This document shows positions 12,571-64,000 of a stretch of 64,000 bases of DNA, one piece after another (position 1 is the stretch's first letter; each line of letters starts with the position of its first letter). The notes under the pieces were generated by a model. That model had not been told where the DNA came from and did no database searches. It saw nothing but the letters and a program-made list of their open reading frames with translations. Both the position numbers and the translations under genes were made by a program. This DNA is from Macrostomum lignano (lineage: Eukaryota): NCBI GenBank assembly GCA_002269645.1, contig NIVC01003103.1, positions 1-64,000 on the forward strand, written 5' to 3'.

Positions 12571-12670
12571 TCACTAACTTGACAATGCGTTTCACGACTG
12601 CAGTTCGGACTGATTCAAAAAAGACGGTTATTAATTCAATAAATAAAATATGAGTTCTATTTGGCAGATT

Positions 12671-25775: not shown

Positions 25776-25982
25776 CTTCGAGCCCCGCTGTGCCCGATTG
25801 GCACCCTGCCAACTGAGATTTTTCATTGCGATGCTTACTAAAACTTCATATAAAATTGTATCATTTGAAAATTTACAAGTTAAATAAAACACTTATTCTG
25901 CGAACGTTTACCAAAATAAGACCTGACCCTCGAGTTCAGCTAAATTTGCATCAAATTATTTTGCAGTTTTGAAATTACTGGA

Positions 25983-26357
25983 GGTTGTAGCCAAGGGGTC
26001 AGTGCGTCGGGCTCACAACTGGAAGGTTGAGGGTTCGATACTCGGCCCACTCGGAACAAGTTGTGTCGTTGAGCAAGACACCTAATTGCTTCAGTTCACC
26101 CAGCTGGGGGTAATTGGTGGTGTGCGCCTCGCCCAATACAGTAAACACGCTGTACTCGTACGAGCTACTATGGGGATTGGCCCTTATGCACCAGAATCGC
26201 TCGACATGCCCCAGTCCATTAGTCGTGGCACCAGCCCCAAATTCATGAAGCACCTGCACCGGCTGCGGGCAGCATTGGGTCGCTGAGGTCTAATTGGACG
26301 GGTTGTGGCGATAAAGTGCCTTTTGCTGAAGTAGGATAATATTAATAGTAATAATAA
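25983..26357 (+). mobile_element. tRNA-derived SINE with CORE-like central domain (copy A)
   Basis: Head ggttgtagcc...gggttcga (A/B boxes), then tgtgtcgttgagcaagacac...cttcagttcacccagctg, ending in a taa-rich tail. The 3' end is approximate. Confidence 0.6.
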
Positions 26358-26637
26358 CTGATTACACCTGCCCCAATTGGGCCCGATGTGCAACCGACAG
26401 CTCAGCCGCAGCTATTGCGCGTCGCATCTGAAGGCTGTTCAGTCCAAGGACTGGGGAGTCGCCACACACCCTCAATTACCTCAGTTAATGCTGGCACCCA
26501 TTTTCCAGATGGGTGAACTGAAGCAATGCAGATTTATGTGTTTTGCTCAAGGACACAAATAGTTCCGAGTGGGATCGGGATTCGAACCCCCGACCTTCAA
26601 GCCGTGAGTCCGTCCCTCTATCCACTAGGCTACAACC
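26358..26637 (-). mobile_element. tRNA-derived SINE with CORE-like central domain (copy B)
   Basis: Minus strand GGTTGTAGCCTAGTGG (A box)...GGTTCGAATCCC (B box), then tgtccttgagcaaaacac...cttcagttcacccatctggaaaatggg, resembling the MIR CORE tgaccttgggcaagtcactt...tcatctgtaaaatggg. Confidence 0.7.
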
Positions 26638-26651
26638 AAATTTATAAGTTG

Positions 26652-36458: not shown

Positions 36459-39400
36459 ATGATTGCACAGCTTCTGCTGCTCTCGCTGGCCGCCTGTGGC
36501 TCCGCGCAGCTCCACTTAGGCTCGTGTGAGTTCTCACCCCACCCCCATCTCATATGAGTTGTAATGGGCTGTCATTCCTGCCCACTGAGTCCTGCCCACT
36601 GATTCCTGCACACTGAGTCCTGCACACTGATTCCTGCACACTGATTCCTGCACACTGATTCCTGCACACTGATTCCTGCACACTGATTCCTGCACACTGA
36701 TTCCTGCACACTGATTCCTGCACACTGATTCCTGCACACTGATTCCTGCACACTGATTCCTGCACACTGATTCCTGCACACTGATTCCTGCACACTGATT
36801 CCTGCACACTGATTCCTGCACACTGATTCCTGCACACTGATTCCTGCACACTGATTCCTGCCCACTGAGTCCTGCCCACTGAGTCCTGCCCACTGAATCC
36901 TGAACACTGAATCCTGCACACTGAATCCTGCACACTGATTCCTGCACACTGATTCCTGCCCACTGATTCCTGCACACTGATTCCTGCCCACTGATTCCTG
37001 CACACTGATTCCTGCCCACTGATTCCTGCACACTGATTCCTGCCCACTGATTCCTGCACACTGATTCCTGCACACTGATTCCTGCCCACTGATTCCTGCA
37101 CACTGAGTCCTGCACACTGATTCCTGCACACTGAGTCCTGCACACTGATTCCTGCCCACTGATTCCTGCACACTGAGTCCTGCCCACTGAGTCCTGCACA
37201 CTGAGTCCTGCCCACTGAGTCCTGCCCACTGAATCCTGCACACTGAGTCCTGCACACTGAGTCCTGCACACTGATTCCTGCACACTGATTCCTGCCCACT
37301 GATTCCTGCACACTGATTCCTGCCCACTGATTCCTGCACACTGAGTCCTGCCCACTGATTCCTGCACACTGATTCCTGCCCACTGATTCCTGCACATTGA
37401 GTCCTGCCCACTAATTCCTGCACACTGATTCCTGCCCACTAATTCCTGCACACTGATTCCTGCCCACTGATTCCTGCACACTGATTCCTGCCCACTGATT
37501 CCTGCCCACTGATTCCTGCACACTGATTCCTGCCCACTGATTCCTGCACACTGATTCCTGCACACTGAGTCCTGCACACTGATTCCTGCACACTGAGTCC
37601 TGCACACTGATTCCTGCACACTGATTCCTGCACACTGAGTCCTGCACACTGATTCCTGCACATTGAGTCCTTCCCACTGATTCCTGCACACTGATTCCTG
37701 CCCACTGATTCCTGCACATTGAGTCCTGCCCACTGATTCCTGCACACTGATTCCTGCACAGTTTTAATTTCCGCATGTGTGTAGATCGTATCAAGGACGG
37801 CTGAAGTAATCTCTATTAAGTAGTCCTTGGCTCGTATACGGAGTGGGAATCGCTCATTCAGTCAGTGGGAATCGCTCATTCAGTCAGTGGGAATCGCTCA
37901 TTCAGTCAGTGGGAATCGCTTAAGCTGAAAACAGCCAGCAGTTCTGCTAAATGAAGTCTCGGGCGTGCGTGTGAGAGTTGGGAGCTGCACTGAAACCAGA
38001 CAGGTCTCTCGTGTTGCTGGGAAAGGAAAAGATTAGGTCCAAGCAGAATGCCAATGAAAAAGATGTTGCAGGGGTGCTGCTAATGAGCTTTGACTCCTCC
38101 TGGCACTCAAAAGAGTTTCAAGAGAATGGGAATTCAGTCTGCCAAGAGAGCCTGCGGTCACAGAACCGGTCATGCGGCTAGCAATGGAGGAGGCGGCTGG
38201 CTCGCCTTATTTTGCGGGTGAATCTTGGCTCCCGCTTGCCTCAGGCCTGTCTTGTGGAATTCTAAGAATTCAAAGTTCTTGAACTATGGAATTCTTGATT
38301 GCCTCATTTTTGGACCTTCACCGGAACCAGATGAGGCGTTCAGGACATTTTGTTTGCATCCCGGAACCGGATAAACCGGAACCGGATAAACCGGAACCGG
38401 ATAAACCGGAACCGGATAAACCGGAACCGGATAAACCGGAACCGGATAAACCGGAACCGGATAAACCGGAACCGGATAAACCGGAACCGGATAAACCGGA
38501 ACCGGATAAACCGGAACCGGATAAACCGGAACCGGATAAACCGGAACCGGATAAACCGGAACCGGATAAACCGGAACCGGATAAACCGGAACCGGATAAA
38601 CCGGAACCGGATAAACCGGAACCGGATAAACCGGAACCGGATAAACCGGAACCGGATAAACCGGAACCGGATAAACCGGAACCGGATAAACCGGAACCGG
38701 ATAAACCGGAACCGGATAAACCGGAACCGGATAAACCGGAACCGGATAAACCGGAACCGGATAAACCGGAACCGGATAAACCGGAACCGGATAAACCGGA
38801 ACCGGATAAACCGGAACCGGATAAACCGGAACCGGATAAACCGGAACCGGATAAACCGGAACCGGATAAACCGGAACCGGATAAACCGGAACCGGATAAA
38901 CCGGAACCGGATAAACCGGAACCGGATAAACCGGAACCGGATAAACCGGAACCGGATAAACCGGAACCGGATAAACCGGAACCGGATAAACCGGAAGGCC
39001 AAGAGTCGGCAGCAACCCCAATTTCCGTCCCGCAGCCACCGGGTTCAGCGTCGGTGAGCTGGAGGAATCCGCGGACGGTTCGAACTTCGCCAACCTGAGC
39101 CGCCTGCCGGCCCGCTCGGACATCGAGTGCGCCACACTGGCCGCCGCGACGCCCGCCGCCACCGCCATCCGCTACCTGCCTCAGGAGGGCGCCTGCCTGC
39201 TGCTGAAGACTGGCGGAAGCTCTGGAACGGAGCAGCAGCTGCCCGCCTCCGACCAGCCTGTGCTGCGGAAGGAGTGGAACATTCCAGGTGTGTATTTTTT
39301 ATCTTATCTGCCGATTTCCTTACGCTACGTATTGTTTTCATGAGTAGAGAGACAAGAGTTCAAAGACAAGGTCTACTACTGAAAGTATAAAGCGGTTTCC

Positions 39401-42400
39401 ATCTCTCTGCAAATCGGCTTCCATCTCTCTGAACAATCGGCTTCCATCTCTCTGCACAATCGGCTTCCATCTCTCTGCACAATCGGCTTCCATCTCTCTG
39501 CACAATCGGCTTCCATCTCTCTGCACAATCGGCTTCCATCTCTCTGCACAATCGGCTTCCATCTCTGCATAATCGGCTTCCATCTCTCTGCAAATCGGCT
39601 TCCATCTCTCTGCACAATCAGCTTCCATCTCTATGAACAATCGGCTTCCATCTCTCTGCAAATCGGCTTCCATCTCTCTGCACAATCGGCTTCCATCTCT
39701 CTGCACAATCGGCTTCCATCTCTCTGCAAATCGGCTTCCATCTCTCTGCAAATCGGCTTCCATCTCTCTGCACAATCGGCTTCCATCTCTCTGCAAATCG
39801 GCTTCCATCTCTCTGCAAATCGGCTTCCATCTCTCTGCAAATCGGCTTCCATCTCTCTGCACAATCGGCTTCCATCTCTCTGCACAATCGGCTTCCATCT
39901 CTCAGCACAATCGGCTTCCATCTCTCTGCACAATCGGCTTCCATCTCTGCACAATCGGCTTCCATCTCTCTGCACAATCGGCTTCCATCTCTCTGCAAAT
40001 CGGCTTCCATCTCTCTGAACAATCGGCTTCCATCTCTCTGCAAATCGGCTTCCATCTCTCTGCACAATCGGCTTCCATCTCTCTGCACAATCGGCTTCCA
40101 TCTCTCTGCACAATCGGCTTCCATCTCTCTGCACAATCGGCTTCCATCTCTCTGCACAATCGGCTTCCATCTCTCTGCAAATCGGCTTCCATCTCTCTGA
40201 ACAATCGGCTTCCATCTCTCTGCAAATCGGCTTCCATCTCTCTGCACAATCGGCTTCCATCTCTCTGCACAATCGGCTTCCATCTCTCTGCAAATCGGCT
40301 TCCATCTCTCTGAACAATCGGCTTCCATCTCTCTGCAAATCGGCTTCCATCTCTCTGCACAATCGGCTTCCATCTCTCTGCACAATCGGCTTCCATCTCT
40401 CTGCAAATCGGCTTCCATCTCTCTGCACAATCGGCTTCCATCTCTCTGCAAATCGGCTTCCATCTCTCTGCACAATCGGCTTCCATCTCTCTGCACAATC
40501 GGCTTCCATCTCTCTGCACAATCGGCTTCCATCTCTGCACAATCGGCTTCCATCTCTCTGCACAATCGGCTTCCATCTCTCTGCACAATCGGCTTCCATC
40601 TCTCTGCACAATCGGCTTCCATCTCTCTGCACAATCGGCTTCCATCTCTCTGCAAATCGGCTTCCATCTCTCTGCACAATCGGCTTCCATCTCTCTGCAA
40701 ATCGGCTTCCATCTCTCTGCACAATCGGCTTCCATCTCTCTGCACAATCGGCTTCCATCTCTCTGCAAATCGGCTTCCATCTCTCTGCAAATCGGCTTCC
40801 ATCTCTCTGCACAATCGGCTTCCATCTCTCTGCAAATCGGCTTCCATCTCTCTGCAAATCGGCTTCCATCTCTCTGCAAATCGGCTTCCATCTCTCTGCA
40901 CAATCGGCTTCCATCTCTCTGCACAATCGGCTTCCATCTCTCTGCAAATCGGCTTCCATCTCTCTGCACAATCGGCTTCCATCTCTGCACAATCGGCTTC
41001 CATCTCTCTGCACAATCGGCTTCCATCTCTCTGCAAATCGGCTTCCATCTCTCTGAACAATCGGCTTCCATCTCTCTGCAAATCGGCTTCCATCTCTCTG
41101 CACAATCGGCTTCCATCTCTCTGCACAATCGGCTTCCATCTCTCTGCACAATCGGCTTCCATCTCTCTGCACAATCGGCTTCCATCTCTCTGCAAATCGG
41201 CTTCCATCTCTCTGCAAATCGGCTTCCATCTCTCTGAACAATCGGCTTCCATCTCTCTGCAAATCGGCTTCCATCTCTCTGCACAATCGGCTTCCATCTC
41301 TCTGCACAATCGGCTTCCATCTCTCTGCAAATCGGCTTCCATCTCTCTGAACAATCGGCTTCCATCTCTCTGCAAATCGGCTTCCATCTCTCTGCACAAT
41401 CGGCTTCCATCTCTCTGCACAATCGGCTTCCATCTCTCTGCAAATCGGCTTCCATCTCTCTGCACAATCGGCTTCCATCTCTCTGCAAATCGGCTTCCAT
41501 CTCTCTGCACAATCGGCTTCCATCTCTCTGCACAATCGGCTTCCATCTCTCTGCAAATCGGCTTCCATCTCTCTGCACAATCGGCTTCCATCTCTCTGCA
41601 CAATCGGCTTCCATCTCTGCACAATCGGCTTCCATCTCTCTGCACAATCGGCTTCCATCTCTCTGCACAATCGGCTTCCATCTCTCTGCACAATCGGCTT
41701 CCATCTCTCTGCACAATCGGCTTCCATCTCTCTGCAAATCGGCTTCCATCTCTCTGCACAATCGGCTTCCATCTCTCTGCACAATCGGCTTCCATCTCTC
41801 TGCAAATCGGCTTCCATCTCTCTGCACAATCGGCTTCCATCTCTCTGCACAATCGGCTTCCATCTCTGCACAATCGGCTTCCATCTCTCTGCACAATCGG
41901 CTTCCATCTCTCTGCAAATCGGCTTCCATCTCTCTGCAAATCGGCTTCCATCTCTCTGCAAATCGGCTTCCATCTCTCTGCACAATCGGCTTCCATCTCT
42001 CTGCAAATCGGCTTCCATCTCTCTGCAAATCGGCTTCCATCTCTCTGCAAATCGGCTTCCATCTCTCTGCACAATCGGCTTCCATCTCTCTGCACAATCG
42101 GCTTCCATCTCTCTGCACAATCGGCTTCCATCTCTCTGCACAATCGGCTTCCATCTCTGCACAATCGGCTTCCATCTCTCAGCACAATCGGCTTCCATCT
42201 CTCTGCACAATCGGCTTCCATCTCTCTGCACAATCGGCTTCCATCTCTCTGCACAATCGGCTTCCATCTCTCTGCACAATCGGCTTCCATCTCTCTGCAA
42301 ATCGGCTTCCATCTCTCTGCACAATCGGCTTCCATCTCTCTGCACAATCGGCTTCCATCTCTGCATAATCGGCTTCCATCTCTCTGCAAATCGGCTTCCA

Positions 42401-43585
42401 TCTTTCTGCAAATCGGCTTCCATCTCTCTGCACAATCGGCTTCCATCTCTCTGCAAATCGGCTTCCATCTCTCTGCAAATCGGCTTCCATCTCTCTGCAA
42501 ATCGGCTTCCATCTCTCTGCACAATCGGCTTCCATCTCTCTGCACAATCGGCTTCCATCTCTCTGCAAATCGGCTTCCATCTCTCTGCACAATCGGCTTC
42601 CATCTCTGCACAATCGGCTTCCATCTCTCTGCACAATCGGCTTCCATCTCTCTGCAAATCGGCTTCCATCTCTCTGAACAATCGGCTTCCATCTCTCTGC
42701 AAATCGGCTTCCATCTCTCTGCACAATCGGCTTCCATCTCTCTGCACAATCGGCTTCCATCTCTCTGCACAATCGGCTTCCATCTCTCTGCACAATCGGC
42801 TTCCATCTCTCTGCACAATCGGCTTCCATCTCTGCATAATCGGCTTCCATCTCTCTGCACAATCGGCTTCCATCTCTCTGCACAATCGGCTTCCATCTCT
42901 CTGCACAATCGGCTTCCATCTCTCTGCACAATCGGCTTCCATCTCTCTGCATAATCGGCTTCCATCTCTCTGCATAATCGGCTTCCATCTCTCTGCAAAT
43001 CGGCTTCCATTTCTCTGCACAATCTCCGCAGAGCCGACGCCGGAGCCCGACAGCAGCGCGGGCTTCACGGTGATCCAGCAGAGGGGCCGCGGACTGGTGA
43101 ACTTCGCCCGCAGCTGGTCTGAGTACCAGACTGGCTTCGGCGACACCGAGGAGTTCTGGCTGGGTCTCGAGACCGTCCACAACCTGACGGCCGCCAAGCC
43201 TCGGCTGCTGCGGATCGAGATGAAGCTGGTCACCGGCAGTCTGTACCGCTTCGACTACAGCAACTTCACCGTGAGCTCGGCGGCCACCATGTACACCATG
43301 AACTACGGCGCGCTGGTGGCCGCCGTCCCCTCGAACGCCACGGCCGGGTCGCGCCTGGACATCTGCAAGGGGAAAATGTTCTCAACTGGCGACACGGACA
43401 ACATCGGCGGCCCGAAGTCGTGCTCCACTGCCGGCAGCAGCTCCGGCTGGTGGTTCGACGACGACTGCCTCTGCTGCAACCCCAACGGCGTCTTCAACTC
43501 CACCGGCTCCTCCGACAATGAAGTCCGCATGTTCTGGGATGGCCTGGGCAGTGGGATCGTGAGCAGCAGAATCATGATCCGCTAG
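36459..43585 (+). CDS. Secreted fibrinogen-related domain (FReD) protein with an N-terminal PAN/apple-like region, 3 exons, 290 aa
   Basis: Exon 36459-36525 encodes the signal peptide MIAQLLLLSLAACGSA. Exon 39036-39287 encodes ...ARSDIECATLAAAT...IRYLPQEGACLLL. Exon 43032-43585 encodes GFTVIQQRGRGLVNFARSWSEYQTGFGDTEEFWLGLETVHNLT...FSTGDTDN...GWWFDDDC...NPNG. The total is 873 nt and both introns are phase 1. The FReD call is firm; the PAN call and exon 1 are inferred. Confidence 0.85.
36575..37760. repeat. 14-bp minisatellite (ctgattcctgcaca), ~85 copies, FReD intron 1
   Basis: Read directly. Confidence 0.95.
37843..37922. repeat. 22-bp repeat (gtgggaatcgctcattcagtca), 3-4 copies
   Basis: Read directly. 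Confidence 0.85.
38361..38995. repeat. Perfect 15-bp array (ccggaaccggataaa) x42, FReD intron 1
   Basis: Read directly; no variant units seen. Confidence 0.98.
39395..43025. repeat. 21-23-bp minisatellite (aatcggcttccatctctctgcac), ~160 copies, filling FReD intron 2
   Basis: Read directly; the array abuts the acceptor at 43031. Confidence 0.98.
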
Positions 43586-46263: not shown

Positions 46264-47059
46264 AAATTTTTTTACAAAGAATTCAGAAATCTGAGGATGA
46301 GACTTTAACACTTAGATTTGCACTGGGACTGCTGTCAATTAGTTGGGGAGTTTGAAAAAATACCGCACGATTCCCTCTCGACACATGCGAGTTCCCGCTG
46401 CTTCTGAAACATTGAACTGTCCCTTTTTTCCTTCTACTGTCCTTATCTCATCCTTAATATTTAGCCAGCTTATCCCAGCCTAATGAATCATTTATTGATC
46501 AGTTTTTACCCAGAGGAAGAGTTTACACAAGGACCACTGTAGTAACAGGACGTAAAACTCAAAGATCATGTAATTTTTTGGAGGCCAATTTCCCGGACAA
46601 ATACACTGCGAAGATAGGAAAAGACTCATTTTCATCACCAAAAATCAGTGATTGCTTTTGATCTGGGGCAGTGAAGATTATCATTCCTTTAATTTTGAAT
46701 ACCCAGCAGGTTACTCTGATTGCATTTTATATGGTTATGAATACGACTGTGAGTCGTAAATACTCACAAGTGGCATTGGCAGAACTTTTTGTTTGATGAT
46801 TTCTTCTATCTCCGCAGTGAATTTTTTCCGGGAAATTGGCCTCCAAAATTACACGATATTTGAGTTTTACGTCCTGCTATACTTGGTCCTTGTGTGTACA
46901 TTTGCATGCCCGACGGTGGGACAGTCAGGGGGCCGCTCTCGCCCACCTCCACAAAGACTGACAAGCAGGTGCATGGCCTTGATATTTTAGCCGAAACAAA
47001 TGCGGGTCAAGTTGACACTCGAGATTGCATTGTGAGCCACATTAATTCTCTCAGTAGTC

Positions 47060-48342: not shown

Positions 48343-51197
48343 TCAGTAGTCAGGCAGGGGCGTCAGTAGCGTCTTCACCACCTGGCGGTAGTTCACAGAG
48401 CCCGACTGGGCCACCCCCGCCTCGCGGAGCAGGCCTTCGACTGCAGTGGCGGGAGGAGGCGGTGCTGGAACTGATGCTGGCTTGGAAATAGGGCGATTCT
48501 CCCACACCCTCCCTCATTAATCCCACACTGCACTCACACTGATCCCACACCCGCACTCACACTGATCCCACACTGCACTCACACTGATCCCACACCGCAC
48601 TCACACTGATCCCACACCGCACTCACACTGATCCCACACTCGCACTCACACTGATCCCACACTGCACTCACACTGATCCCACACCGCACTCACACTGATC
48701 CCACACCTGAACTCACACTGATCCCACACTGCACTCACACTGATCTCACACTGCACTCACACTGATCCCACACCTGCACTCACACTGATCCCACACCTGC
48801 ACTCACACTGATCCCACACCGCACTCACACTGATCCCACACCGCACTCACACTGATCCCACACCTGCACTCACACTTATCCCACACTGCACTCACACTGA
48901 TCCCACACCGCACTCACACTGATCCCACACCTGCACTCACACTGATCCCACACCTGCACTCACACTGATCCCACACCGCACTCACACTGATCCCACACCT
49001 GCACTCACACTGATCCCACACTGCACTCACACTGATCCCACACTGCACTCACACTGATCCCACACCTGAACTCACACTGATCCCACACCTGAACTCACAC
49101 TGATCCCACACTGCACTCACACTGATCCCACACTGCACTCACACTGATCCCACACTGCACTCACACTGATCCCACACTCGCACTCACACTGATCCCACAC
49201 TGCACTCACACTGATCCCACACCGCACTCACACTGATCCCACACCCGCACTCACACTTATCCCACACCTGCAATCACACTGATCCCACACCACACTCACA
49301 CTGATCCCACACCCGCACTCACACTGATCCCACACCTGCACTCACACTGATCCCACACCGCACTCACACTGATCCCACACCGCACTCACACTGATCCCAC
49401 ACCGCACTCACACTGATCCCACACTGCACTCACACTGATCCCACACCGCACTCACACTGATCCCACACCGCACTCACACTGATCCCACACCTGCACTCAC
49501 ACTGATCCCACACCGCACTCACACTGATCCCACACCGCACTCACACTGATCCCACACCGCACTCACACTGATCCCACACCCGCACTCACACTGATCCCAC
49601 ACCGCACTCACACTGATCCCACACCGCACTCACACTTATCCCACACCTGCAATCACACTGATCCCACACCGCACTCACACTGATCCCACACCGCACTCAC
49701 ACTGATCCCACACCGCACTCACACTGATCCCACACCGCACTCACACTGATCCCACACCCGCACTCACACTGATCCCACACCGCACTCACACTGATCCCAC
49801 ACCGCACTCACACTGATCCCACACCGCACTCACACTGATCCCACACCGCACTCACACTGATCCCACACCGCACTCACACTGATCCCACACCGCACTCACA
49901 CTGATCCCACACCTGAACTCACACTGATCCCACACCGCACTCACACTGATTCCACACCGCAATCACACTGATCCCACACCTGCAATCACACTGATCCCAC
50001 ACCGCACTCACACTGATCCCACACTGCACTCACACTGATCCCACACCTGCACTCACACTGATCCCACACCGCACTCACACTGATCCCACACCGCACTCAC
50101 ACTGATCCCACACTGCACTCACACTGATCCCACACCGCACTCACACTGATCCCACACCGCACTCACACTGATCCCACACCTGCACTCACACTGATCCCAC
50201 ACCGCACTCACACTGATCCCACACCGCACTCACACTGATCCCACACCGCACTCACACTGATCCCACACCGCACTCACACTGATCCCACACCGCACTCACA
50301 CTGATCCCACACCGCACTCACACTGATCCCACACCGCACTCACACTGATCCCACACCGCACTCACACTGATCCCACACCGCACTCACACTGATCCCACAC
50401 CGCACTCACACTGATCCCACACCCGCACTCACACTGATCCCACACCGCACTCACACTGATCCCACACCGCACTCACACTGATCCCACACCGCACTCACAC
50501 TGATCCCACACCGCACTCACACTGATCCCACACCGCACTCACACTGATCCCACACCTGAACTCACACTGATCCCACACCGCACTCACACTGATCCCACAC
50601 CGCACTCACACTGATCCCACACCTGAACTCACACTGATCCCACACCGCACTCACACTGATCCCACACCGCACTCACACTGATCCCACACCGCACTCACAC
50701 TGATCCCACACCGCACTCACACTGATCCCACACCGCACTCACACTCTCTGGCGCTGAGCCGCTCTCCCTGGTTGCAGAGGACGCGGCGCAGCTCGCTGAC
50801 GGGCACGGTGCCGCGGCCCTGGGGGTCGTACAGCTTCAGCGCCTCCATCATGTCCCGCTCGGCATTCTCGGCCCGCCGGTGCCGGTGGAGAATCTCCAGG
50901 AACTGGGGGAAGTCCAGCTCACCGGTGCTGGCCTTGCCCTCCGCCAGGTATTTCCTGGCCTCGTCTATGTGGGGCGCGAACCCCAGACTGCGCATGACCA
51001 GCAGCAGCTGCTCCGCCGTGCCCACCCGGCCCTGCTTGCAGTGCAGGTAGAAGCACTCGCGGTAGGCTGATGTGAAATTGAGGAAAAAAGATCTTGGTAT
51101 GTGATGGAAATTTAATTTTTCTTACTAGCATTAGCATACCAACATCTGACAAGCTTTTGCACTTACTGTCTAACTGGTCCTGTGTGAAGTGGCGCGC
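48343..51197 (-). CDS. CALML4: Calmodulin-like protein 4; initiator ATG not assigned
   Basis: Exons 51197-51167, 51066-50743 and 48440-48343 total 453 nt. They give (M)ARHFTQDQLDTYRECFYLHCKQGRVGTAEQLLLVMRSLGFAP...GELDFPQFLEILH...QGERLSAREFEGLLREAGVAQSGSVNYRQVVKTLLTPLPDY*. The N-terminus and the PxPDY end match the CALML4 subfamily. Confidence 0.88.
48520..50742. repeat. 22/23-bp minisatellite (cacactgatcccacaccgcact), ~100 copies, filling the last CALML4 intron
   Basis: Read directly. The sense-strand unit contains GTGAGT. Confidence 0.98.
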
Positions 51198-54956: not shown

Positions 54957-57130
54957 TCAGACGAACACTTTAGCGAGGCCGTCGGCTCCGGCGCTGGCCA
55001 TGAAACTCTTGGACGGGTGCAGCGCCAGGGCGTGGATGGCCTCGTCAAATTTCTTTCTATGCGCGGTGATCTCCTGCATGCAGGTGCGGTCGTCCAGGCG
55101 CCACAGCCGGATGGAGCTGTCGTGGCTGCCGGACAGCATGTACAGGCCGTTGGTGTCGATGGCCAGGCTGGTGACGCTGTCCAGGTGGGCCACCATGCTG
55201 TGCGCCAGGCCGCCCGAGTTCATGTCGTAGAACCGGATCCGCCTGTCCTCGTGCGCCGCGATGCAGACGGCCTGGGCGGGGTGCGCGATGGCCGCGTTGG
55301 CCGGCCCGGCGCCGTCTTCGCTGAGCCGCGCGATCACCTGGCCGGTCTCGGCGTCCATCAGCAGGCACTGGCCGGACTGCAGCGACACGAGCAGCTTGCC
55401 GGGGTCGGCCGGCAGGAGGCCCAGGCTGGTCGGCGAGTGCGGCAGCTGGCGGCAGCTCAACAGGCGCTGCTCGGCCGGCTGGCTGGGCCGCCAGGCGCGA
55501 AGCGTCCGATCGGCGCCGATGGAGAACAGCGTGGTGGGGGCGCCGCTGGCCGGCCTGAGGACGGATTTGACAGTAATAGACAATAACTCAATATGCGACT
55601 CCCCATGAGCTCCTACAGCCACTGCATCGTACCCGAACCCTCCTTACCTGGAGGCGGCGAGGCCCCACACGGCGTCCTCGTGGCCGGTGAGCACGGGGCC
55701 AACCAGGCTGGCATCGAACGGGTCGTAGGGGTCCATGGACAGCGGCGGGAGGCCCCAGACTCTGACGGTGCCGTCCAGGCCGCCAGAGAACAGCAGCTGG
55801 TCGGCGATGCAGGCGCAGAGGACGGGGCCGGCGTGGCCGCGGAAGGTGTGAATGGGCTCCAGGTCCACCGACATGCCCTTCTTGGTGGGCTGCTCGCTGG
55901 GCGCCTTGCTGACATTCCACAGCTTCAGGGTGCAGTCCTCCGAGGCCGTCACCAGCGCCGGCTCGGTGGGATGGAAGAAGAGCGACCTCACCGAGTCGAA
56001 GTGCGACCGCAGGCTGAACTTGATCGCCCAGGTGCGGCGGCACTCGGCTGTCGTGCCGGCGTCGCTCTCGTTGGCCACGGTGATGTCCTGCAGGTCGCCC
56101 AGGTTGAGCCCCAGAGCCGAGCGGAAGCCCTCCTCCTCGGAGCCGCCGCCGGACCCCGCAGCGCCGCCACCGCCGCCAGACACGGCCAGGCGGATTTCGG
56201 GATCGTCAAGAGTGGGGTAGGGCCCTGTGGGCTCCGTCTCGGGCGGCGGTGAGCCCGCCCGGTCCGGCTCGTCCATGAAGCCGCCGGAGCCGCCGCCGCC
56301 GCTTGACCGTTTCGGAGCGCGGACCCGCTCTTTGCGGAAGTCGGCCATCTTGGAGAGGGTCTTCTCGTCCATGGCCCATTCGGACTGCTCCTGCTGGTTC
56401 ACCAGGAAGTCGAACTCGGCAATTACCTGGGGATTGAGAAAAATGCAGCGAACTTATTAATAGTAGGAATAGCAAGACCCAAGCCCACTTTTAAAATGAT
56501 CATCTCAGCAGCTCTGGTGATAATAGGTTGGTAGCCACACAGCAACGGCTTCATCACCTGTTCCTCCTCAGTGACGGTAGGTCCGCCTCCGCCGCTGCTC
56601 CCAGACTCCTCGTCGCTGCCTTCATCGTCGACATTGATTCCCATGCTACTCAGTTGCTCCTCGATGGTCCGCCGACCCTTGCCGCCGCCGCCGCTGTCTT
56701 TGACGTCCCCGGAGGCTGGGCCGGCCGGGTATGCGGCTGTGGAAGAGGCGGCAGCGGACGGGGAGCCAAGCAGCTGCTCAACTCGAGCCTGCTTGACATC
56801 CGTGATGACCTCATTGTAGCCCATCTCCTGCAGGTACTGCTTGATCACCTCCCGGCCATCCTTGCGCTTAGCCGGCTGCTGCTGCTGCAGCGCTTCGGTC
56901 AGCTCAGCAGCGGCCGGCTCGGAGACCGGCGCGCCCTCGTCCTCGGCGCCGAGGTCGGGCTTGGCAAGGTCGGCTGCGGTGAAGCCGGGCGGCTCCGTGC
57001 CGAACTTCAGCCGGTGGAATTTCGCCCGCTCCTGCTTCAACGCGAATTCCAGCATCTTGATGCGGCGCACCAGGTCGTGCTTCAGGTTCTCCTGGCCCTT
57101 GCGCTCGCCCTGGAGGAAGGCGATACGCGC
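54957..57130 (-). CDS. STRN3: Striatin-family WD40 protein (STRIPAK scaffold), 5'-partial
   Basis: Exons 57130-56558, 56426-55648 and 55554-54957 are in frame. They give ARIAFLQGERKGQENLKHDLVRRIKMLEFALKQERAK, IAEFDFL, TWAIKFSLRSHFDSVRSLFFHPTEPALVTASEDCTLKLWN and HSMVAHLDSVTSLAID...QEITAHRKKFDEAI...ASAGADGLAKVFV*. Exon 1 was not found up to 64000. The paralog symbol is approximate. Confidence 0.93.
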
Positions 57131-57871
57131 CTGGGGTGGGAAAATGCGGTTTTGTTAAGGCCTGCAGCTCCCGGAGTTGTCAAACAGCGCCATAGCTTGA
57201 GAGAATCGGCACTGGATGGCAAGGTTTGTAAACTATATCTTCGTGTTGGAAAAAATGCTGTACTACTCATTACTAGTTACCAAAAATGTAATTAGCGCTA
57301 CTTCTTATCAGTAACGATCATTCATTTTTTAAAATTCTCCCATTACTTCATTACCAAAATGCTACAAGATATTGAATAATACACGTATCAAGGTACAAAT
57401 AATAAATGCACTTATTAATGACATGCAACTAACAAAGGAATGAATAAATTTGTGGTGTATTTTTATTGTTGGTTAATGGCTGGTCAGAATGGCAAAAATC
57501 TTAGTGTATATATTAAAAAAATTATTTTGTATATTTAATTTGGAAGATTTTTTGTTTAAGGTCAGGAGGGTAAAAAAGTATTTCAATGTACTTAAACTTT
57601 GCTTAAATTTCACTTTTTTGAAAATTGAGTTTAAATTAACTTTAACAAACTAAAAAATATAGAATGAAAGGCTCCTATATGTAAAAAATGTAATCCCATA
57701 GTAACAGACTGAGCATAGTGCATCATATCAAGGGCAGTTGGCAAACAAATACATATGTAGCACAGTTGCCAAGTCAGGAAAATAATACTTTCCTTTAGGA
57801 AAAGAAACTTCAAAGCATATGAATTCATGACTTGGCTAATATTGCCAATCTAGTAAGCAATGTTTGGATAA

Positions 57872-58905
57872 CCCAGGTAAAATTGCCATGTCTCCTATAG
57901 TGACTAGACATGGTCCAGTAGATATCATTGGTGTATCATGTATGCAAATTCCATTGATGTCGCCATTGCCATCGGAGACATGTGGGGACATTAACCGAGA
58001 CATCATGCTATGTGGAAACATGGCGAGATATCAAGATGAGGCATAATGCAAGACATAAAGAGACATTACCCAAGAACTCATTTCAATGAGACATGGTGAG
58101 ACACTGTGCAAGACATCATTCATATCCACAAGACATGGCGAGACATGACCACATAAATGACAATTTTTCTAATTATACACTGCACTAAAATACAAAAATG
58201 TATACTATGACATACTGCACTTAAGGTACATATTGTAATTAATCCTATTCATGATACTTACATAAAGACCATAGAATGATATAGAATACCAAATAGAATG
58301 AAATCCTAACTTTCAGTCCATAGAAGGGGAGTCATGTACAGGGACAGTCTACTATTGGTCTGTACTCATATTTTTAGCCTTCCCTTACTGACATACTTGC
58401 AAACTTTAATAAATACCAGGAAATTCTTTAGAAAACTGTTTCTCTAAACTGTTATCTAAATATACTAAATCAGTATACTAAATATATACATTGAGACATA
58501 AGTTAGTAATTTGAGAGTCATGAGCTACAAGTGCACATTGTATAAAACCAATGGAACACATCTATTCAAACAATTTAAGCATAATTTCCTATCCCTTCTT
58601 GCTTTCTTAACCGGGCTGGGGATTGGATATGGCAGAGTTAAACAGGGTACAAAAGTGTCACCAAGTCATGTCCCAAGATGTCTTGGAAAAAATATGTCTC
58701 GGAGTGATGTCTTGGGATGTCTTGGAGTGATGTCTCAATGTCTTAGGGCCATGTCTCGAAAAAAAGATATCTCAGGCTAATGTCTTTAAAGAGACATCCT
58801 ATATGATGTCTCCCCAACAAGTCAATAGACATGTCAACATGTCAATTGATATCTTTAGGAGGGGGTGTTGCAATGTCCTTGGGACATCTTTAATTTTTAC
58901 TTGAT
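57872..58905. mobile_element. Degenerate non-autonomous DNA element with oppositely oriented subterminal GAGACA/TGTCTC repeats
   Basis: gagacat motifs cluster at 57990-58150 and atgtctc/atgtctt motifs at 58665-58880. The termini ca(g/a)gtaaaa..tt...atgtc.c are roughly inverted. Confidence 0.45.
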
Positions 58906-59537
58906 AAAAAAAGGAAATTAGAAATTTGTTTTCAAGACCTACTAGTAGATAATTATATAAAAATCATAGGTTACATATTTGAGTTGAAATAGTTCAACTT
59001 TGTATGAAACAATTACTTTACCAGAAATTAGTAAGGATAATTCTGCCAAGATTAACATACATAAAAGATTATGGTCCCTCTTTTGTATTTAAAATAATGT
59101 TGCTATATAACTAAACCAATTATAGCTAACTAATTAGAATTAATTAGACAAATATTTAAATCTCTATAAGACTATTTCAACTATCTGCAATCTATCCAGG
59201 TTTTTATTTATATTTTTATGTATATTACATATATTATGTATATTAGAACCAATAAAAGCTTTATCAATGCCGTATAGTTAGAAAAAAAGGCATATATGCC
59301 AGAAATTTCCTAGGTATAGTCTAGAAATTGGTATAAAAAAGTGATTTTTTTTGCTTTTGGTATACATGTTTAATATTTTGGTGATAACATATACAAAAAT
59401 TTAAAAAATATATAATAATAATAGTCATAATAGTTGCACTTGCATATTTAATTATAAAAATTGATAAATATTTAATATAAAACTGATTTCTATGTTTTTG
59501 AAATATAAAGCTTAAAAGTTTAATTAAAAATGCATAA

Positions 59538-60045
59538 GCCACACTCTGGATCATGTAGTATATGCCCAAAATATAGGCATGCATTGGCCTTGCATGCCAA
59601 AAATAGGTATGCACAGTTGGCATACATTACTCCTAAGAAACTAGTATGCATGCATACCTAGCATGCACTTCATAGAATCACATGGAAAAGTTATTGTGAA
59701 GTAGAAAAAAAAGCTGAAAAAAGGTTCATTTTTAGGCATAAATTTCAAGCTTTCTGGTTTTTTAAGCTTGTAATAAAGCATTTAAACAAAAAATTTACAT
59801 GTATCAATTTTTACTATAAATAATATCATTAAAAAAGCAGAAAAATTATCCAAATTATTTGCAAAAAGGGTTCATTATGCAATGTAAAAAAGGGTCATTT
59901 ATTGTCACAATATAAAAAAGGATCATTTATTGTTGCAACATTGGCATAGTTTTGAGAATGGGTATGCACTCAATATTTTTTGGCATGAATTTGTAATTAT
60001 TTGATTTTTGTTCAGGTGTACACCCATCATGATCTGGACTATGGT
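59538..60045. mobile_element. More diverged relative of the foldback element
   Basis: 59700-59970 aligns by eye to 60820-61060 (gttcatttt..gcataaatttcaag...agcttgtaata...ctataaataatat...ggtcat.tattgttgcaaca). It ends with ctggactatgg. Confidence 0.55.
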
Positions 60046-60577
60046 GCACAAGTTTAACTTTTTCATATTTTCTCCATTTGAGAAGCTATTTTAGCATGTT
60101 TGGACTATTAAAACAATAAAATTAACAACTTTGTTTTTTAGTACTTTTTCTGTCTCTTGCGTGGGGTAAAAAAGAAATGAAAGGCCTATGCCATGAGTTA
60201 AACTTGTATTTATACTAACATAGTGAACAGGTTAGCTGAAATATCTATGGTAAATTAATGGCTGGGATTGTCTATGGGGAAAAGCATGGTAGACAAAGGG
60301 AGTTGGCTAACTGAAAAGTACAAGGCTGAATTGCAAAACAAAAGTACAAATTTTTGAAGGATGGAAATTTAACATATGTTGTCTGACATGCCATTGATAC
60401 TTGTTGGGAGTCTATGGCCCAAAGGGATGAGTTGGTTAAAGGGGAAAGGGAAGTCTAAGCACTTAGACTTATGTTCTTGCTGGTGCTGCTAATTAATTCT
60501 TGCTAAGACTATTAACCAACCATTAAGTCTATCAACACTGCCAAGAGGCCGCCCTCAAATAGTTAGGAATCATTAAG

Positions 60578-61654
60578 CCATAGTCTGAAGAGGGGTGGTA
60601 TGCCGGATTAATCCGGCATATACTCATGACTTTTGGCATACACTTGGCATACAATTTTTTACTTTTTGAAATCTGGTGTACTTATCTAGCATATAAAAAT
60701 GCTTATTCAAAAAGTGGCATATATGTTCCTGCAGTTGTGGAATCAAATCAAATAGTCTAAGAAAATAGTGCGCATGCAGCTAATAGTATCACGCAAGAGT
60801 TTGTGAAAAGTACAAAAAACATAAAACAAGTTCATTTTTAAGCATAAATTTCAAGGCTTTGGGTTTTGAGAGCTTGTAATAGAAATTTAAACAAATCTTT
60901 GTGTGTATTAAGTTTCCCCTATAAATAATATTAGCAAAAAAGCAAAAGTATCAATTATATTATTAGCTCAAAAGGGTTACTTTACGCAATTTAAGAGAAT
61001 AATATACATTGTTGCAAAGGTCATGTATTGTTGCAACACTGGGGTAGATTTGAGAGTGGGCATACACCATAGTTTGGAATACCCTGAATGTATGCCAGAC
61101 TAAAATCTCTCACAATTTTTCGGTACAACAGTAAACATGCCTGCCCACCAGTAAGCATGCCCATTTTCAAATCTACGCCGGTATTGCGACAATAAATGAC
61201 CTTTTTTACATTGTAACAATGAATTATTTTGTTTTTAAATTGTGTAAAGTAACCCTTTTTAGCTAACAATTTGGTTAATACTTTTGCTTTTTTGTTGATA
61301 TTATTTATAGCAGAAACTTAATACACACAAAGATTTGTTTAAATTTTTTATTACAAGCTCTAAAAACCCGGAAAGCTTGAAATTGCTTAAAAATGAACTT
61401 GTTTTATGTTTTTTATTCACTTTTCACAAACTTTTCTGCATGATTCTATTAACTGCATGCACACTATTTTCTTAGACTTTTTGATTTAATTCCGCAACTA
61501 TGGGAACATGTACACCACTTTTTAAATATGCATTTTTATACACTAGATAGTATGCCAGATTTCAAAAAGTAAAAAATTGTACGCCAAGTGTATGCCAAAA
61601 GTTGTGAATATACGCTAGATTAATCCGGCGTACTACCCCTCTTCTGGACTATGG
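60578..61654. mobile_element. Foldback element, ~490-bp inverted arms with a ~90-bp spacer
   Basis: The left arm ccatagtctgaagaggggtggtatgccggattaat... (60578 to ~61065) aligns along its length to the reverse complement of ~61155-61654 (ccatagtccagaagaggggtagtacgccggattaat...). Confidence 0.85.
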
Positions 61655-62364
61655 AGCATACACTCAAACTTTGGCGTACACTGGCGTACCAAAAAAATTG
61701 AGAGAGATTTTAGGGACTTCTTCAAGTTTATGTTGATAAAATACTTCCGATTTTTCAATTTTTCTGAAACTTGTAGTGGAGACTTATGGGGCACCCAAAA
61801 TTACAAAAATGCAAAAAAAGTGTAGAAAGTTACCTATACGGTTAATGCAATGACGATTTACTTGATTCCCTATTCTCTTAATAAGGTTCGGTGAGAAAAA
61901 GTTTCTACAAATACATTTTTGAAAGTGTATCCACTTGACTTTTAATTTTATGGCACATGTGCTAGAACTTCATTAGGCCAATTAAAGATGAATATTAATA
62001 TCTACAAATTAATATGCAAATGTTTTTTATGTTTGCGGATTATAGTTTTTCAATTTAGTTATAATGCATAGACAGTGCCACGTCACTGTGTGCTTTTTTC
62101 AAAAAACTGCCACGTCACAACCCGCTCAATCTTTGCACTTGCACTTTCACTGCACCCAGCCAAAGCAACGTTCAAAATTCGCACTTGTATTTTGCACCTC
62201 AAAACCAACTACTATATAAGGCTAGATTACTAATTCTATTGTATTAAGGCAGTAACAACACTTAATTTTGGTAAGCAAATTCATTTAGATAAAGTTATGT
62301 TGATTCAAGTTTATGTTGATATAATTAAACAGAGATTCATTGTCAAATAAATTCCAACTTGTTT

Positions 62365-62684
62365 CAACCCCCCCCCCCCTATTAGAATTGGAATTTATCA
62401 GCACAATCTTGAATAGGTCTCTATGCCTCTATTCAAGTTTATGTTGATAAAATCAATCCCCATGAAGAATCTCCCCACCCTAAAACCCCCCATTCCCCAT
62501 GCCCTGGTGATTGGTTTTAAGCTACAACCCCCCCCCCCCTATTAGAATTGGAATTTATCAGCACAATCTTGAATAGGTCTCTATGCCTCTATTCAAGTTT
62601 ATGTTGATAAAATCAATCCCCATGAAGAATCTCCCCACCCTAAAACCCCCCATTCCCCATGCCCCGGTGGTTGGTTTTAAGCTA
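62365..62684. repeat. 160-bp direct tandem duplication
   Basis: caacc(c)n tattagaattgg...ggttttaagcta starts at 62365 and again at 62525. Confidence 0.9.
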
Positions 62685-64000
62685 CATATAATTGGGTTAA
62701 AGCTACCTAAAAATGAAGCTCAAATTTGAAATCAGCACCATCAAAAACCTTATAGAGACAAAATTATGATCCTATCCAAATTGAAACTATTTTATCAACA
62801 TAAACTTGAAGTTGAAGAAGTCCGATTTTAGTCCATTGTACATTCAGGGTGTTCCAAACTATGGTCATTAGGAATAGCTTAAGATAGAAAAAAGTACTTA
62901 AAAAACAAAGTTGTTAATTTTAATGTTTTAATAGCTCTGGTCTGGGGATATCTAAACATGCTAAAATCAGCTTTTCAAGTGGAGTAGATGCAAAAAACAT
63001 TGAAAAAATAGTTTGACAAAACAATTTGAAAAGAATGCCAAAATATTATATAAGTATAATTATTATTTTTAGTTTTTTATTTCACCTGATTGAAATTAAA
63101 TATCAAAATCACAACTCTTGTAGTAATACTTAAATCAACAATTTAGAGCTTTGCATAAGGTAATATATTTAGTATACACCAGTATATACCAAAAAATGGT
63201 CAGAGTGTTTTGAACTATGGTCTATGCCATAAATTTGGCATTTGGCATTTGCAATTTTGATGGCACAAAAGTGATTATTAATGACATGTCAATATTACTA
63301 GACCTCTTAAGTGATAAGTCATTTTGCATTGTTAATAATTTATATTATTTGACATTTATATTATAAGCCAGCCATTATTTGTCCAGTGACTAGACAAATA
63401 GCCTTTTTGCTATTTGTCTGTTTAAATTGATAACACAAAGTATCTTATTTGTTTTGTGATGAATATTCTAGATTTTTAAGACCTTTTCTCATATACTGAT
63501 TACACTCTACATGCACCTAGAGTGTAAGCAAAGCAGTGTATTCAATTTGGCAATTTGGTGTATAAGACACACACTAGTATAACAATATAATAATCAAGAT
63601 ATGAGTAAGAAGTCTTTGAAGTCTAGAATTATTTACCCTTGTGGTTTTTATGAACTATATATTTTAGCATTATCATTTTAACCAGACAAATAACAAAATG
63701 TCTATTTGTCTGGTAATAACCAGATGAATAGGAAAGCATGGTCAGGATCCAGTAACCGGACAAATAACCACATCACTATTCGTCTGGTCACCGGACAAAT
63801 AACAACTGCCATATTACAAATATGATATTGATAGATTAGATAAATTAAACTTTAAGACTAATGACACTTTTAGACTTAATTACTATACTTGTTTTAATGT
63901 AAAATGATTTTACTATTATTATGATCTGCACAGACATATAGCAAATTTATTAGAAAAGGTTAGTTAATGCATAATGATTAATGTCAATGTGTTGCTAGAC

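What the first reader, a model, noticed from the sequence alone, without database searches (positions are those of the whole stretch)
60578..61654. Reciprocal CpG->TpG/CpA decay in a foldback element while genes remain CpG-rich
Aligning the two arms shows mismatches concentrated at inferred CpGs. Three reciprocal pairs fall within about 50 nt: ctggTGtac/ctggCAtac, tagCAtata/tagTGtata and gtggCAta/gtggTGta. One-sided cases include taTGcc/taCGcc, ggCAtac/ggCGtac, gtTGgg/gtCGgg-type, caCGc/caTGc and taCGc/taCAc. This is the signature of germline 5mC deamination. Exons in this window are dense in CpG, the reverse of the usual invertebrate pattern of gene-body methylation. It points to transposon- or repeat-targeted methylation, possibly hairpin-RNA guided, since the element probably lies in striatin intron 1 and would form ~0.5 kb of dsRNA.
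Basis: partly seen in the sequence, partly recalled or inferred. Interest (0 to 1): 0.78.

Follow-up and report, generated by a model that had tools for sequence, protein, structure and literature searches.

The report
CpG decay in flatworm intronic hairpin repeat
Two inverted 0.5-kb repeat copies in an intron of the flatworm Macrostomum lignano's striatin gene have lost most of their CpG sites in the way methylated DNA does, while nearby exons kept theirs; this is a familiar footprint, but in an animal whose methylation map has not been described.

Summary
The arms at 60578-61063 and 61157-61654 align over 481 columns with 57 mismatches. Twenty-one mismatch columns lie at inferred CpGs: 10 one-sided sites, 5 reciprocal TG/CA pairs and only 1 CpG kept in both arms. 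About 72% of CpGs decayed per arm, roughly 15 times the mean site rate.

Germline 5mC deamination is the best explanation. Other inverted repeats in the same window, 8-18% diverged, keep their CpGs (Fisher p=0.001). So the effect is local, not a universal mutation bias.

The exon contrast is real. Conserved-gene exons have CpG o/e 0.96 (0.99 at codon junctions). The striatin 5' intron has 0.28.

The element-specific and hairpin-RNA parts are not supported. Intron sequence flanking the arms is more depleted (0.13-0.29) than the arms (0.40 and 0.82). Another hairpin-forming repeat shows no decay. The depleted unit appears to be the whole repeat-rich intron.

The window comes from Macrostomum lignano. 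Reviews say it retains DNMT1 and DNMT3, has low 5mC, and has no described methylation pattern. Repeat methylation is already known in other invertebrates. This is a modest, testable lead from one locus.

The parts
60578..61063 (+). Left arm of the inverted repeat (486 nt, GC 0.325, 5 CpG, CpG o/e 0.40)
   Evidence: It aligns to the reverse complement of the right arm at 88.1% identity.
61064..61156 (.). Spacer or loop (93 nt). Positions 61066-61107 are 86% identical to the reverse complement of 62824-62865, so the spacer is itself part of another repeat.
61157..61654 (-). Right arm (498 nt, GC 0.299, 9 CpG, CpG o/e 0.82). It keeps intact GGCGTAC motifs.
60599..60620 (.). Perfect 22-nt palindrome TATGCCGGATTAATCCGGCATA near the outer end of the left arm. 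Its partner in the right arm is 61611-61632, TACGCTAGATTAATCCGGCGTA. The inferred ancestor is TACGCCGGATTAATCCGGCGTA, with 4 CpGs.
   Evidence: plus a direct reading of the sequence.
60615..60722 (+). Cluster of subterminal GGYRTAY motifs (ancestral GGCGTAC), mirrored on the minus strand at 61510-61596. Three of the five reciprocal TG/CA pairs (60677, 60690, 60718) fall in or beside this motif.
   Evidence: 26 of the 46 window matches lie in 59289-61689..
59661..59969 (+). Third, older partial copy of the family (72% identical to the left arm, 78% to the reverse complement of the right arm). The wider region 59280-60050 carries decayed GGCATAC-type motifs and has no CpG at all.
   Evidence: At two alignment sites the three copies read CG, TG and CA (A1 columns 33-34 and 233-234).
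61655..61713 (+). Right flank with two intact GGCGTAC motifs. It also holds a 34-nt inverted repeat partner (61680-61713) of 61100-61132, so family sequence extends beyond the main arms.
62778..62997 (-). Related short repeat that joins three segments without interruption: 60059-60155, 61066-61107 and 61714-61753. It resembles an empty-site or deletion version of the locus.
57147..64000 (-). Striatin 5' intron, running off the window end. It is AT-rich (GC 0.316) and CpG-depleted (o/e 0.28 for 57200-64000), and it contains all the repeat parts listed above.
54957..57146 (-). Striatin coding exons (coiled-coil to WD40 C-terminus), GC 0.664, CpG o/e 0.94.

Best explanation
The two arms are paralogous copies, in inverted orientation, of a roughly 0.49-kb non-coding repeat. 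They lie in a 5' intron of the striatin gene of the flatworm Macrostomum lignano.

Since they were duplicated, each arm has lost about 70% of its roughly 22 CpGs to TpG or CpA. Other sites changed by only about 4% per arm. The most likely cause is cytosine-5 methylation of this DNA in the germ line or stem-cell lineage, followed by spontaneous deamination of 5mC to T.

The methylated unit appears to be the whole repeat-rich, AT-rich intron rather than the hairpin. The GC-rich exons of striatin and of neighbouring housekeeping genes were not methylated over evolutionary time.

Shown here: the CpG-specific spectrum, its restriction to this locus, the depletion of the whole intron, and the sparing of exons. 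Inferred: that 5mC is the cause, and that DNMT1 and DNMT3 (retained in this species according to the literature) lay it down. Unknown: what directs methylation to this region.
For: - Spectrum and statistics. Only 1 of 16 inferred CpG sites is intact in both arms. The maximum-likelihood decay per arm is 0.72 (95% CI 0.55-0.85), about 15 times the mean per-site rate.
- Three-way decay with the third copy, reading CG, TG and CA at the same site twice.
- Intact GGCGTAC motifs show the ancestral state of the sites that now read GGCATAC or GGTGTAC.
- Internal control: other inverted repeats in the window keep their CpGs (7 conserved, 3 one-sided, 0 reciprocal, against 1, 10 and 5 here). Fisher p=0.0013.
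- Other AT-rich stretches, probably intergenic, have o/e 0.69-0.83, against 0.28 in this intron.
- Exon CpG o/e is 0.96, and 0.99 at the codon 3|1 junction, with GC3 at 0.846.
- CpG-to-TpG or CpA variants are also the main polymorphism in several minisatellite arrays of the window.
- Organism: the 1037-aa ORF is 99% identical to a M. lignano protein.
- M. lignano retains DNMT1, DNMT3 and ALKB2 (PMC9246332). Low-level 5mC is reported for it (PMC11292947 and PMC10658182, both citing Wasik 2015).
Against: - No methylation data were examined, so the link to 5mC is indirect.
- This is one locus in one 64-kb window.
- No family copies from elsewhere in the genome could be obtained. Ancestral states therefore rest on arm-to-arm comparison, one decayed third copy and motif recurrence.
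- Polarising changes with the third copy was unreliable.
- 'Methylated because it is repeat' and 'methylated because it is a transcribed intron' are confounded, because only one large intron is in the window.
- Reported 5mC levels in this species are low.
- Strong GC-favouring forces in exons (GC3 0.85) could in principle mask some CpG loss.
Confidence: 0.75

Rival explanations
1. Hairpin-RNA or small-RNA guided methylation. On this view, transcription of the inverted repeat within the striatin pre-mRNA yields about 0.5 kb of dsRNA. Small RNAs made from it direct DNMTs specifically to the element.
For: The minus-strand transcript folds into a near-continuous stem of about 480 bp, at -613 kcal/mol. 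M. lignano has an active piRNA pathway (PMC4604429).
Against: Depletion is not confined to the arms: the flanking intron pieces are more depleted than the arms. Another hairpin-forming inverted repeat (25975-26645, z=-17) and a second one at 46.5 kb show no CpG decay. No RNA-directed DNA methylation from hairpins is known in invertebrate animals (own knowledge). The piRNA paper reports no link to methylation.
Confidence: 0.07
2. Gene-body (transcription-unit) methylation of intron DNA. On this view the intron is methylated because it lies inside an active gene, not because it is repetitive, and exons escape or are protected.
For: The whole 6.8-kb intron stretch is depleted (o/e 0.28). AT-rich stretches that are probably intergenic are not (0.69-0.83). 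Importin-7 introns are intermediate at 0.54. In cnidarians, transposons in long, active genes are preferentially methylated (PMC8857917).
Against: Canonical invertebrate gene-body methylation is enriched in exons (PMC7343188). Here the exons of the same gene have o/e 0.94, and 0.99 at codon junctions. The intron is packed with repeats, so the two readings cannot be separated in this window.
Confidence: 0.15
3. CpG hypermutability or AT-biased mutation pressure that does not depend on methylation. On this view, a general context effect or faster deamination in extruded single-stranded hairpin DNA produced the pattern.
For: The region is AT-rich (GC 0.32). Non-CpG C/T mismatches are also fairly common (CpA 0.20, CpT 0.18).
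Against: A general bias would act everywhere. Other inverted repeats and AT-rich DNA in the same window keep their CpGs. Deamination of single-stranded DNA would hit C in every context, but CpG is 3 to 8 times more affected than the other contexts.
Confidence: 0.03
4. A repeat-induced point mutation (RIP)-like process that detects the duplication and mutates both copies.
For: The two copies are duplicated and both carry many C-to-T changes. Ts:tv is 44:13.
Against: The organism is an animal, and RIP is known only in fungi (own knowledge). Intron sequence outside the arms, much of it with no other copy in the window, is at least as CpG-depleted. Away from CpGs, ts:tv is an ordinary 23:13. Other duplicated inverted repeats are unaffected.
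Confidence: 0.01

Closest known systems
Transposon-targeted CpG methylation in invertebrates, and the CpG depletion it causes (cnidarians: Ying et al. 2022, PMC8857917; centipede, mealybug and others: Lewis et al. 2020, PMC7343188)
   Same: Repeats, especially those inside long active genes, are methylated and lose CpG. Methylation of genes and of transposons can be uncoupled: gene methylation was lost in crustaceans while moderate transposon methylation is seen in the crustacean Parhyale hawaiensis (PMC7343188).
   Different: Here the evidence is only a sequence footprint. Depletion covers the whole intron rather than ending at element boundaries. The exons of housekeeping genes show no depletion at all. 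The host is a free-living flatworm, for which no methylation pattern had been published as of a 2022 review (PMC9246332).
Vertebrate-type CpG decay of interspersed repeats, such as Alu CpG sites mutating about 10 times faster (own knowledge)
   Same: The rate excess is of the same order (about 15 times). The outcomes are the same TpG and CpA, including reciprocal TG/CA between paralogous copies.
   Different: The M. lignano window is a mosaic. Exons, several minisatellites and other inverted repeats keep CpG at about the expected frequency.
Foldback (FB-like) or long-TIR non-autonomous DNA transposons
   Same: Arms of about 0.49 kb in inverted orientation, a short spacer, a short motif (GGCGTAC) repeated in the outer part of each arm, no coding capacity, and at least one more degenerate copy nearby.
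   Different: No target-site duplication was found at the outer ends. The spacer and flanks belong to another repeat that exists uninterrupted 1.7 kb away. The locus may therefore be two head-to-head insertions or a local inverted duplication rather than one mobile foldback element.
Plant-style hairpin or inverted-repeat RNA-directed DNA methylation
   Same: A long, near-perfect hairpin transcript is predicted.
   Different: Depletion is not limited to the part that would form dsRNA. No small-RNA data were examined. The pathway is not known in animals of this kind.

Membership tests
5mC-deamination (CpG decay) footprint | Transitions enriched at CpG relative to other C contexts | tested here: met
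   C/T mismatch fraction: CpG 0.61, against CpA 0.20-0.32, CpT 0.18 and CpC 0.08. CG is retained in both arms at 1 of 12 sites, Fisher p=1e-4.
5mC-deamination (CpG decay) footprint | Excess of the products TpG and CpA, including reciprocal TG/CA between paralogues | tested here: met
   Five TG/CA doubles against a simulated mean of 0.57, P=4e-4. The (TG+CA) o/e is 1.2-1.47 in the arms and the third copy.
5mC-deamination (CpG decay) footprint | The effect is absent from unmethylated DNA of the same genome (mosaic control) | tested here: met
   Other inverted repeats keep their CpGs (7 conserved, 3 one-sided, 0 reciprocal, against 1, 10 and 5), p=0.0013. Exon o/e is 0.96.
5mC-deamination (CpG decay) footprint | The organism has DNMT1 and DNMT3, and 5mC is present at the locus | not testable with these tools
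   Literature only: DNMT1 and DNMT3 are retained and 5mC is low in M. lignano (PMC9246332, PMC11292947). No methylation reads were available here.
Foldback or long-TIR DNA transposon | Long terminal inverted repeats with internal sub-repeats | tested here: met
   Arms of 486 and 498 nt at 88% identity. GGYRTAY motifs cluster in the outer arms.
Foldback or long-TIR DNA transposon | Target-site duplication flanking the element | tested here: not met
   The flanks are ...TCATTAAG|CCATAGT... and ...ACTATGG|AGCATACA..., with no direct repeat. A direct CCATAGT brackets only the left arm (60578-60584 and 61067-73), and the left flank does not match the related uninterrupted repeat.
Foldback or long-TIR DNA transposon | Multiple dispersed copies in the genome | tested here: inconclusive
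   One extra degenerate copy lies 0.6 kb upstream. There are no copies elsewhere in the window. Two metagenome pattern scans were empty. The host genome was not available.
Canonical invertebrate gene-body methylation | Exons of broadly expressed genes are methylated and so CpG-depleted | tested here: not met
   CpG o/e: importin-7 0.95, striatin 0.94, IFT57 0.90, and the codon 3|1 junction 0.99.
Small-RNA or hairpin-RNA directed DNA methylation | Methylation footprint confined to the region homologous to the dsRNA | tested here: not met
   Flanking intron pieces have o/e 0.13-0.29, against 0.40 and 0.82 in the arms.
Small-RNA or hairpin-RNA directed DNA methylation | Small RNAs derived from the hairpin | not testable with these tools
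Repeat-induced point mutation (RIP) | Mutation restricted to duplicated DNA, in a fungal host with RID-type machinery | tested here: not met
   The host is a flatworm. Sequence around the arms is equally depleted. Other duplicated repeats are unaffected.

The most novel reading that the evidence does not exclude
In Macrostomum lignano the retained DNMT1/DNMT3 system may methylate repeat-rich, AT-rich intronic and repeat DNA in the germ or stem-cell lineage while leaving the GC-rich exons of housekeeping genes unmethylated. That would invert the canonical exon-centred invertebrate mosaic. It would also be the first described methylation pattern for a free-living flatworm. A more speculative extension is that long intronic hairpins such as this one help to seed the methylated domain through small RNAs.
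Probability: 0.35. Interest if true: 0.6.

Novelty: new member of a known kind. Interest (0 to 1): 0.38.

Why it matters
Flatworms are usually treated as animals that lost DNA methylation: planarians and parasitic flatworms lack DNMT1 and DNMT3. [quoted passage not shown]

This locus gives a concrete prediction that can be checked directly. Methylation has acted for a long time on a repeat-rich intron and not on exons. If that held genome-wide, it would place M. lignano among the few animals with repeat-centred rather than exon-centred methylation. M. lignano is also a transgenic, RNAi-amenable model, so the link between DNMTs, the piRNA pathway and repeats could be tested in it.

As a single-locus sequence footprint of a well-known mutational process, it is not surprising in itself.

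Tried and rejected
- Family copies outside the window. Exact-pattern scans of the metagenome collection with a 28-mer conserved in both arms, and with the degenerate terminal motif, both found nothing. No eukaryotic genome collection was available, so a family-wide substitution spectrum could not be computed.
- Polarising arm differences with the third copy (59661-59969). Rejected as unreliable because that copy is itself fully CpG-decayed and AT-shifted. It gives a spurious excess of AT-to-GC changes. I used only the sites where the three copies show three different states.
- Identifying the organism from striatin. The best hits were only about 50% identical and spread across Bilateria, so they were uninformative. 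The lineage-specific 1037-aa ORF solved it.
- Rfam and tRNA scans of the window found nothing.
- Target-site duplication and single-element anatomy. No duplication was found at the outer ends. The relations among 60059-60155, 61066-61107, 61714-61753 and the uninterrupted 62778-62997 suggest nested insertions or an inverted duplication, but two copies cannot resolve the history.
- The primary M. lignano genome paper (Wasik 2015), which reportedly contains bisulfite data, is not held in the library. Its content is cited only through later papers.
- PacBio foldback assembly artefact. Rejected: the arms are 12% diverged with a biological, context-specific spectrum and an asymmetric 93-nt spacer.

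Full report
**1. What is there**

The left arm is 60578-61063, the right arm 61157-61654, and a 93-nt spacer separates them. A gapped alignment of the left arm with the reverse complement of the right arm gives 481 aligned columns, 57 mismatches (88.1% identity) and 22 gap columns. The transcript of the minus strand, which is the sense of the host gene, folds into a nearly continuous stem of about 480 bp at -613 kcal/mol.

**2. The substitution spectrum**

Of the 57 mismatches, 44 are transitions and 13 transversions. Twenty-one mismatch columns sit at inferred CpGs:
- six CG/TG sites, three CG/CA sites and one CG/TA site;
- five adjacent TG/CA doubles, at 60627, 60677, 60690, 60718 and 60730.

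Only one CpG is intact in both arms. I found two more.

Several tests show this is not chance:
- CG is retained in both arms at 1 of 12 sites where either arm has it. Every other dinucleotide is retained at 30-81% (Fisher p=1e-4; against GC alone, p=0.012).
- The fraction of C positions that differ by a C/T change is 0.61 before G. It is 0.32 before A (0.20 once the reciprocal pairs are removed), 0.18 before T and 0.08 before C.
- Random placement of the same 57 substitutions gives a mean of 0.57 TG/CA doubles, and five or more in 0.04% of trials.
- A simple model uses three classes: conserved, one-sided and reciprocal sites. Half of the double decays are invisible to it. It gives a per-arm decay probability of 0.72 (95% CI 0.55-0.85) and about 22 ancestral CpGs per arm.
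- The resulting CpG hazard is about 15 times the mean per-site substitution rate. Non-CpG divergence between the arms is K=0.085.

Two independent lines support the inferred ancestral CpGs. First, a third, older copy at 59661-59969 reads CA where the arms read CG and TG, and reads TG where they read CG and CA. Second, the affected sites often lie in a short motif that recurs in the outer arms and survives intact as GGCGTAC in the right arm and its flank. Elsewhere it reads GGCATAC or GGTGTAC. Twenty-six of the 46 window matches to GGYRTAY fall in 59289-61689. On the plus strand, TG and CA outcomes are about equal (11 against 8, counted), so there is no strand bias.

**3. Surroundings and organism**

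Pfam and homology searches identify these genes in the window:
- IFT57, importin-7 and striatin on the minus strand;
- an EF-hand (calumenin-like) gene and a fibrinogen-domain gene on the plus strand;
- a Tc1/mariner-like remnant.

The 1037-aa ORF at 9457-12570 is 99% identical over its full length to a Macrostomum lignano UniRef entry. The window therefore comes from this free-living flatworm.

The striatin exon that encodes ARIAFLQGERKGQENL... has its splice acceptor at about 57146/57147. No GC-rich coding exon lies between there and the window end. The repeat therefore sits in a 5' intron of at least 6.8 kb. Whether this is intron 1 cannot be decided.

**4. CpG content by compartment**

| Compartment | GC | CpG o/e |
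|---|---|---|
| Conserved-gene exons (7.8 kb) | 0.665 | 0.96 |
| Striatin 5' intron, 57200-64000 | 0.316 | 0.28 |
| Left arm | 0.325 | 0.40 |
| Right arm | 0.299 | 0.82 |
| Third-copy region, 59280-60050 | 0.271 | 0.00 |
| Intron pieces around the arms | 0.32-0.35 | 0.13, 0.19, 0.29 |
| Other AT-rich, probably intergenic stretches | 0.32-0.35 | 0.69-0.83 |
| Importin-7 introns | 0.518 | 0.54 |

Exon GC3 is 0.846. Position-specific CpG o/e in exons is 1.01 at codon positions 1-2, 0.76 at 2-3 and 0.99 at the 3|1 junction. Exons have therefore not lost CpG even where amino-acid constraint is weakest.

A rough mutation-fixation argument (my inference) bears on this. A GC-favouring bias strong enough to hold GC3 at 0.85 would still leave CpG at about half of expectation if it mutated 10-15 times faster. 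Exon methylation at the intron's level is therefore unlikely.

The depleted unit is thus the intron as a whole. The arms are less depleted than their surroundings, as expected for a younger duplication decaying inside an already methylated region.

**5. Internal controls**

The window has other inverted repeats:
- 25983-26107 with 26505-26637 is 18% diverged. It would also form a strong hairpin (-311 kcal/mol, z=-17).
- 46525-46617 with 46806-46895 is 8% diverged.

Together they show 7 CpGs conserved in both arms, 3 one-sided and no reciprocal pair. The foldback shows 1, 10 and 5 (Fisher p=0.0013). CpG hypermutability is therefore local, not a genome-wide context bias, and hairpin potential alone does not bring it about.

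In minisatellite arrays, transition variants at consensus CpGs (6.0%) outnumber those at other C/G positions (1.9%). They are the main variant in four arrays. Two other arrays keep every CpG. These counts are not independent events, but they fit a mosaic.

**6. Mechanism**

The best explanation is germline 5mC deamination in a historically methylated, repeat-rich intron domain (confidence about 0.75). The shown steps are the spectrum, its restriction to this locus, the regional extent and the sparing of exons. The inferred steps are that 5mC is the cause and that DNMT1 and DNMT3 lay it down.

[quoted passage not shown] Later papers cite Wasik 2015 for low-level 5mC (PMC11292947, PMC10658182). 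I could not read the primary paper.

Rivals:
- **Hairpin or small-RNA guidance.** Not supported by the extent of depletion or by the control hairpin, but not excluded. A piRNA pathway exists (PMC4604429).
- **Gene-body methylation of intron DNA.** Cannot be separated from repeat targeting with a single large intron. However, exon-enriched methylation, the canonical form (PMC7343188), is contradicted.
- **Methylation-independent bias and RIP-like processes.** Both are contradicted by the controls.

**7. What the element is**

It behaves like a foldback or long-TIR non-autonomous repeat: inverted arms of 0.49 kb, a recurring subterminal motif, no ORF, and one more degenerate copy nearby. Membership is uncertain for three reasons:
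- There is no target-site duplication at the outer ends.
- The spacer (61066-61107) and two flanks (60059-60155 and 61714-61753) are contiguous in a related repeat at 62778-62997.
- A separate 34-nt inverted repeat (61100-61132 with 61680-61713) brackets the right arm.

The locus may be two head-to-head insertions or a local inverted duplication. This does not affect the CpG analysis, which needs only two paralogous copies.

**8. Comparison with what is known, and verdict**

CpG decay of methylated repeats is textbook in vertebrates. Transposon-targeted methylation, including that of intragenic transposons, is documented in cnidarians (PMC8857917). It is also documented in several arthropods, with gene and transposon methylation gained and lost independently (PMC7343188).

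The finding is therefore a new instance of a known kind. Its value lies in the host: it predicts a repeat- or intron-centred, exon-sparing methylome in a model flatworm whose pattern is undescribed.

Interest is about 0.38.

Noticed in passing
window 8772-50745 (many loci): The window is packed with minisatellite arrays: at least 20 with periods of 4-42 nt and up to 3.6 kb long, for example 39393-43024, 26654-28890 and 48520-50745. Some lie inside the short introns of importin-7 (18146-18298, 19212-19470, 20361-20500). Many create long spurious ORFs.
   Followed up: partly
window 38361-38996: A 15-nt array (CCGGAACCGGATAAA, 42 copies) is 100% identical between units and keeps both CpGs in every unit (local CpG o/e 1.41). 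It is either very young or homogenised, or it lies in unmethylated DNA. This contrasts with arrays at 12670, 26667 and 48520, whose main variants are CpG changed to TpG or CpA.
   Followed up: partly
window 5996-6655: An internally deleted Tc1/mariner-like element of about 660 bp. Its terminal inverted repeats are about 49-60 nt (90-96% identical), and it carries a 179-aa ORF fragment that matches DDE_3 (PF13358). CpG o/e is about 0.75.
   Followed up: partly
window 25975-26645: An inverted repeat with arms of about 125 nt predicted to form a strong hairpin (z=-17). The arms contain tRNA-like box-B-type sequence (GGTTCGA.../...TCGAACC), which suggests a head-to-head pair of tRNA-derived SINEs. 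ARAGORN calls no tRNA there. Its CpGs are retained despite 18% arm divergence.
   Followed up: partly
window 9457-12570 (+): An uninterrupted 1037-aa ORF with no Pfam match. It is 99% identical to the M. lignano UniRef entry A0A1I8HQL3 ('Suf domain-containing protein') and had no other homologue at E<=1e-6 among 5.8 billion proteins. Its GC (0.47) is much lower than that of the neighbouring genes. It appears to be a lineage-restricted gene.
   Followed up: partly
window 60599-60620: The left-arm palindrome TATGCCGGATTAATCCGGCATA is perfect although both outer CpGs have decayed, one to TG and the mirror one to CA. The two changes are symmetric, so the palindrome is preserved. This could be chance (1 in 2), or conversion or selection on a binding site.
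   Followed up: no
window 60578-60584 and 61067-61073; 62858-62864: The left arm is bracketed by a direct CCATAGT. The related uninterrupted repeat at 62778-62997 has a single CCATAGT at the matching point. This looks like a 7-bp target-site duplication, but the left flank matches that repeat only in reverse orientation, so the insertion history is unresolved.
   Followed up: partly
window 54957-57146 and 17005-21914: Exons are extremely GC-rich (GC3 0.85), whereas large introns and intergenic DNA have about 30% GC. Adjacent striatin ORFs are separated by only about 20 nt, which suggests very short introns alongside the large 5' intron.
   Followed up: no
window 62365-62684: Two tandem 160-bp units differ at only two positions. 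One of these is CCTGG against CCCGG, a CpG/TpG difference.
   Followed up: yes
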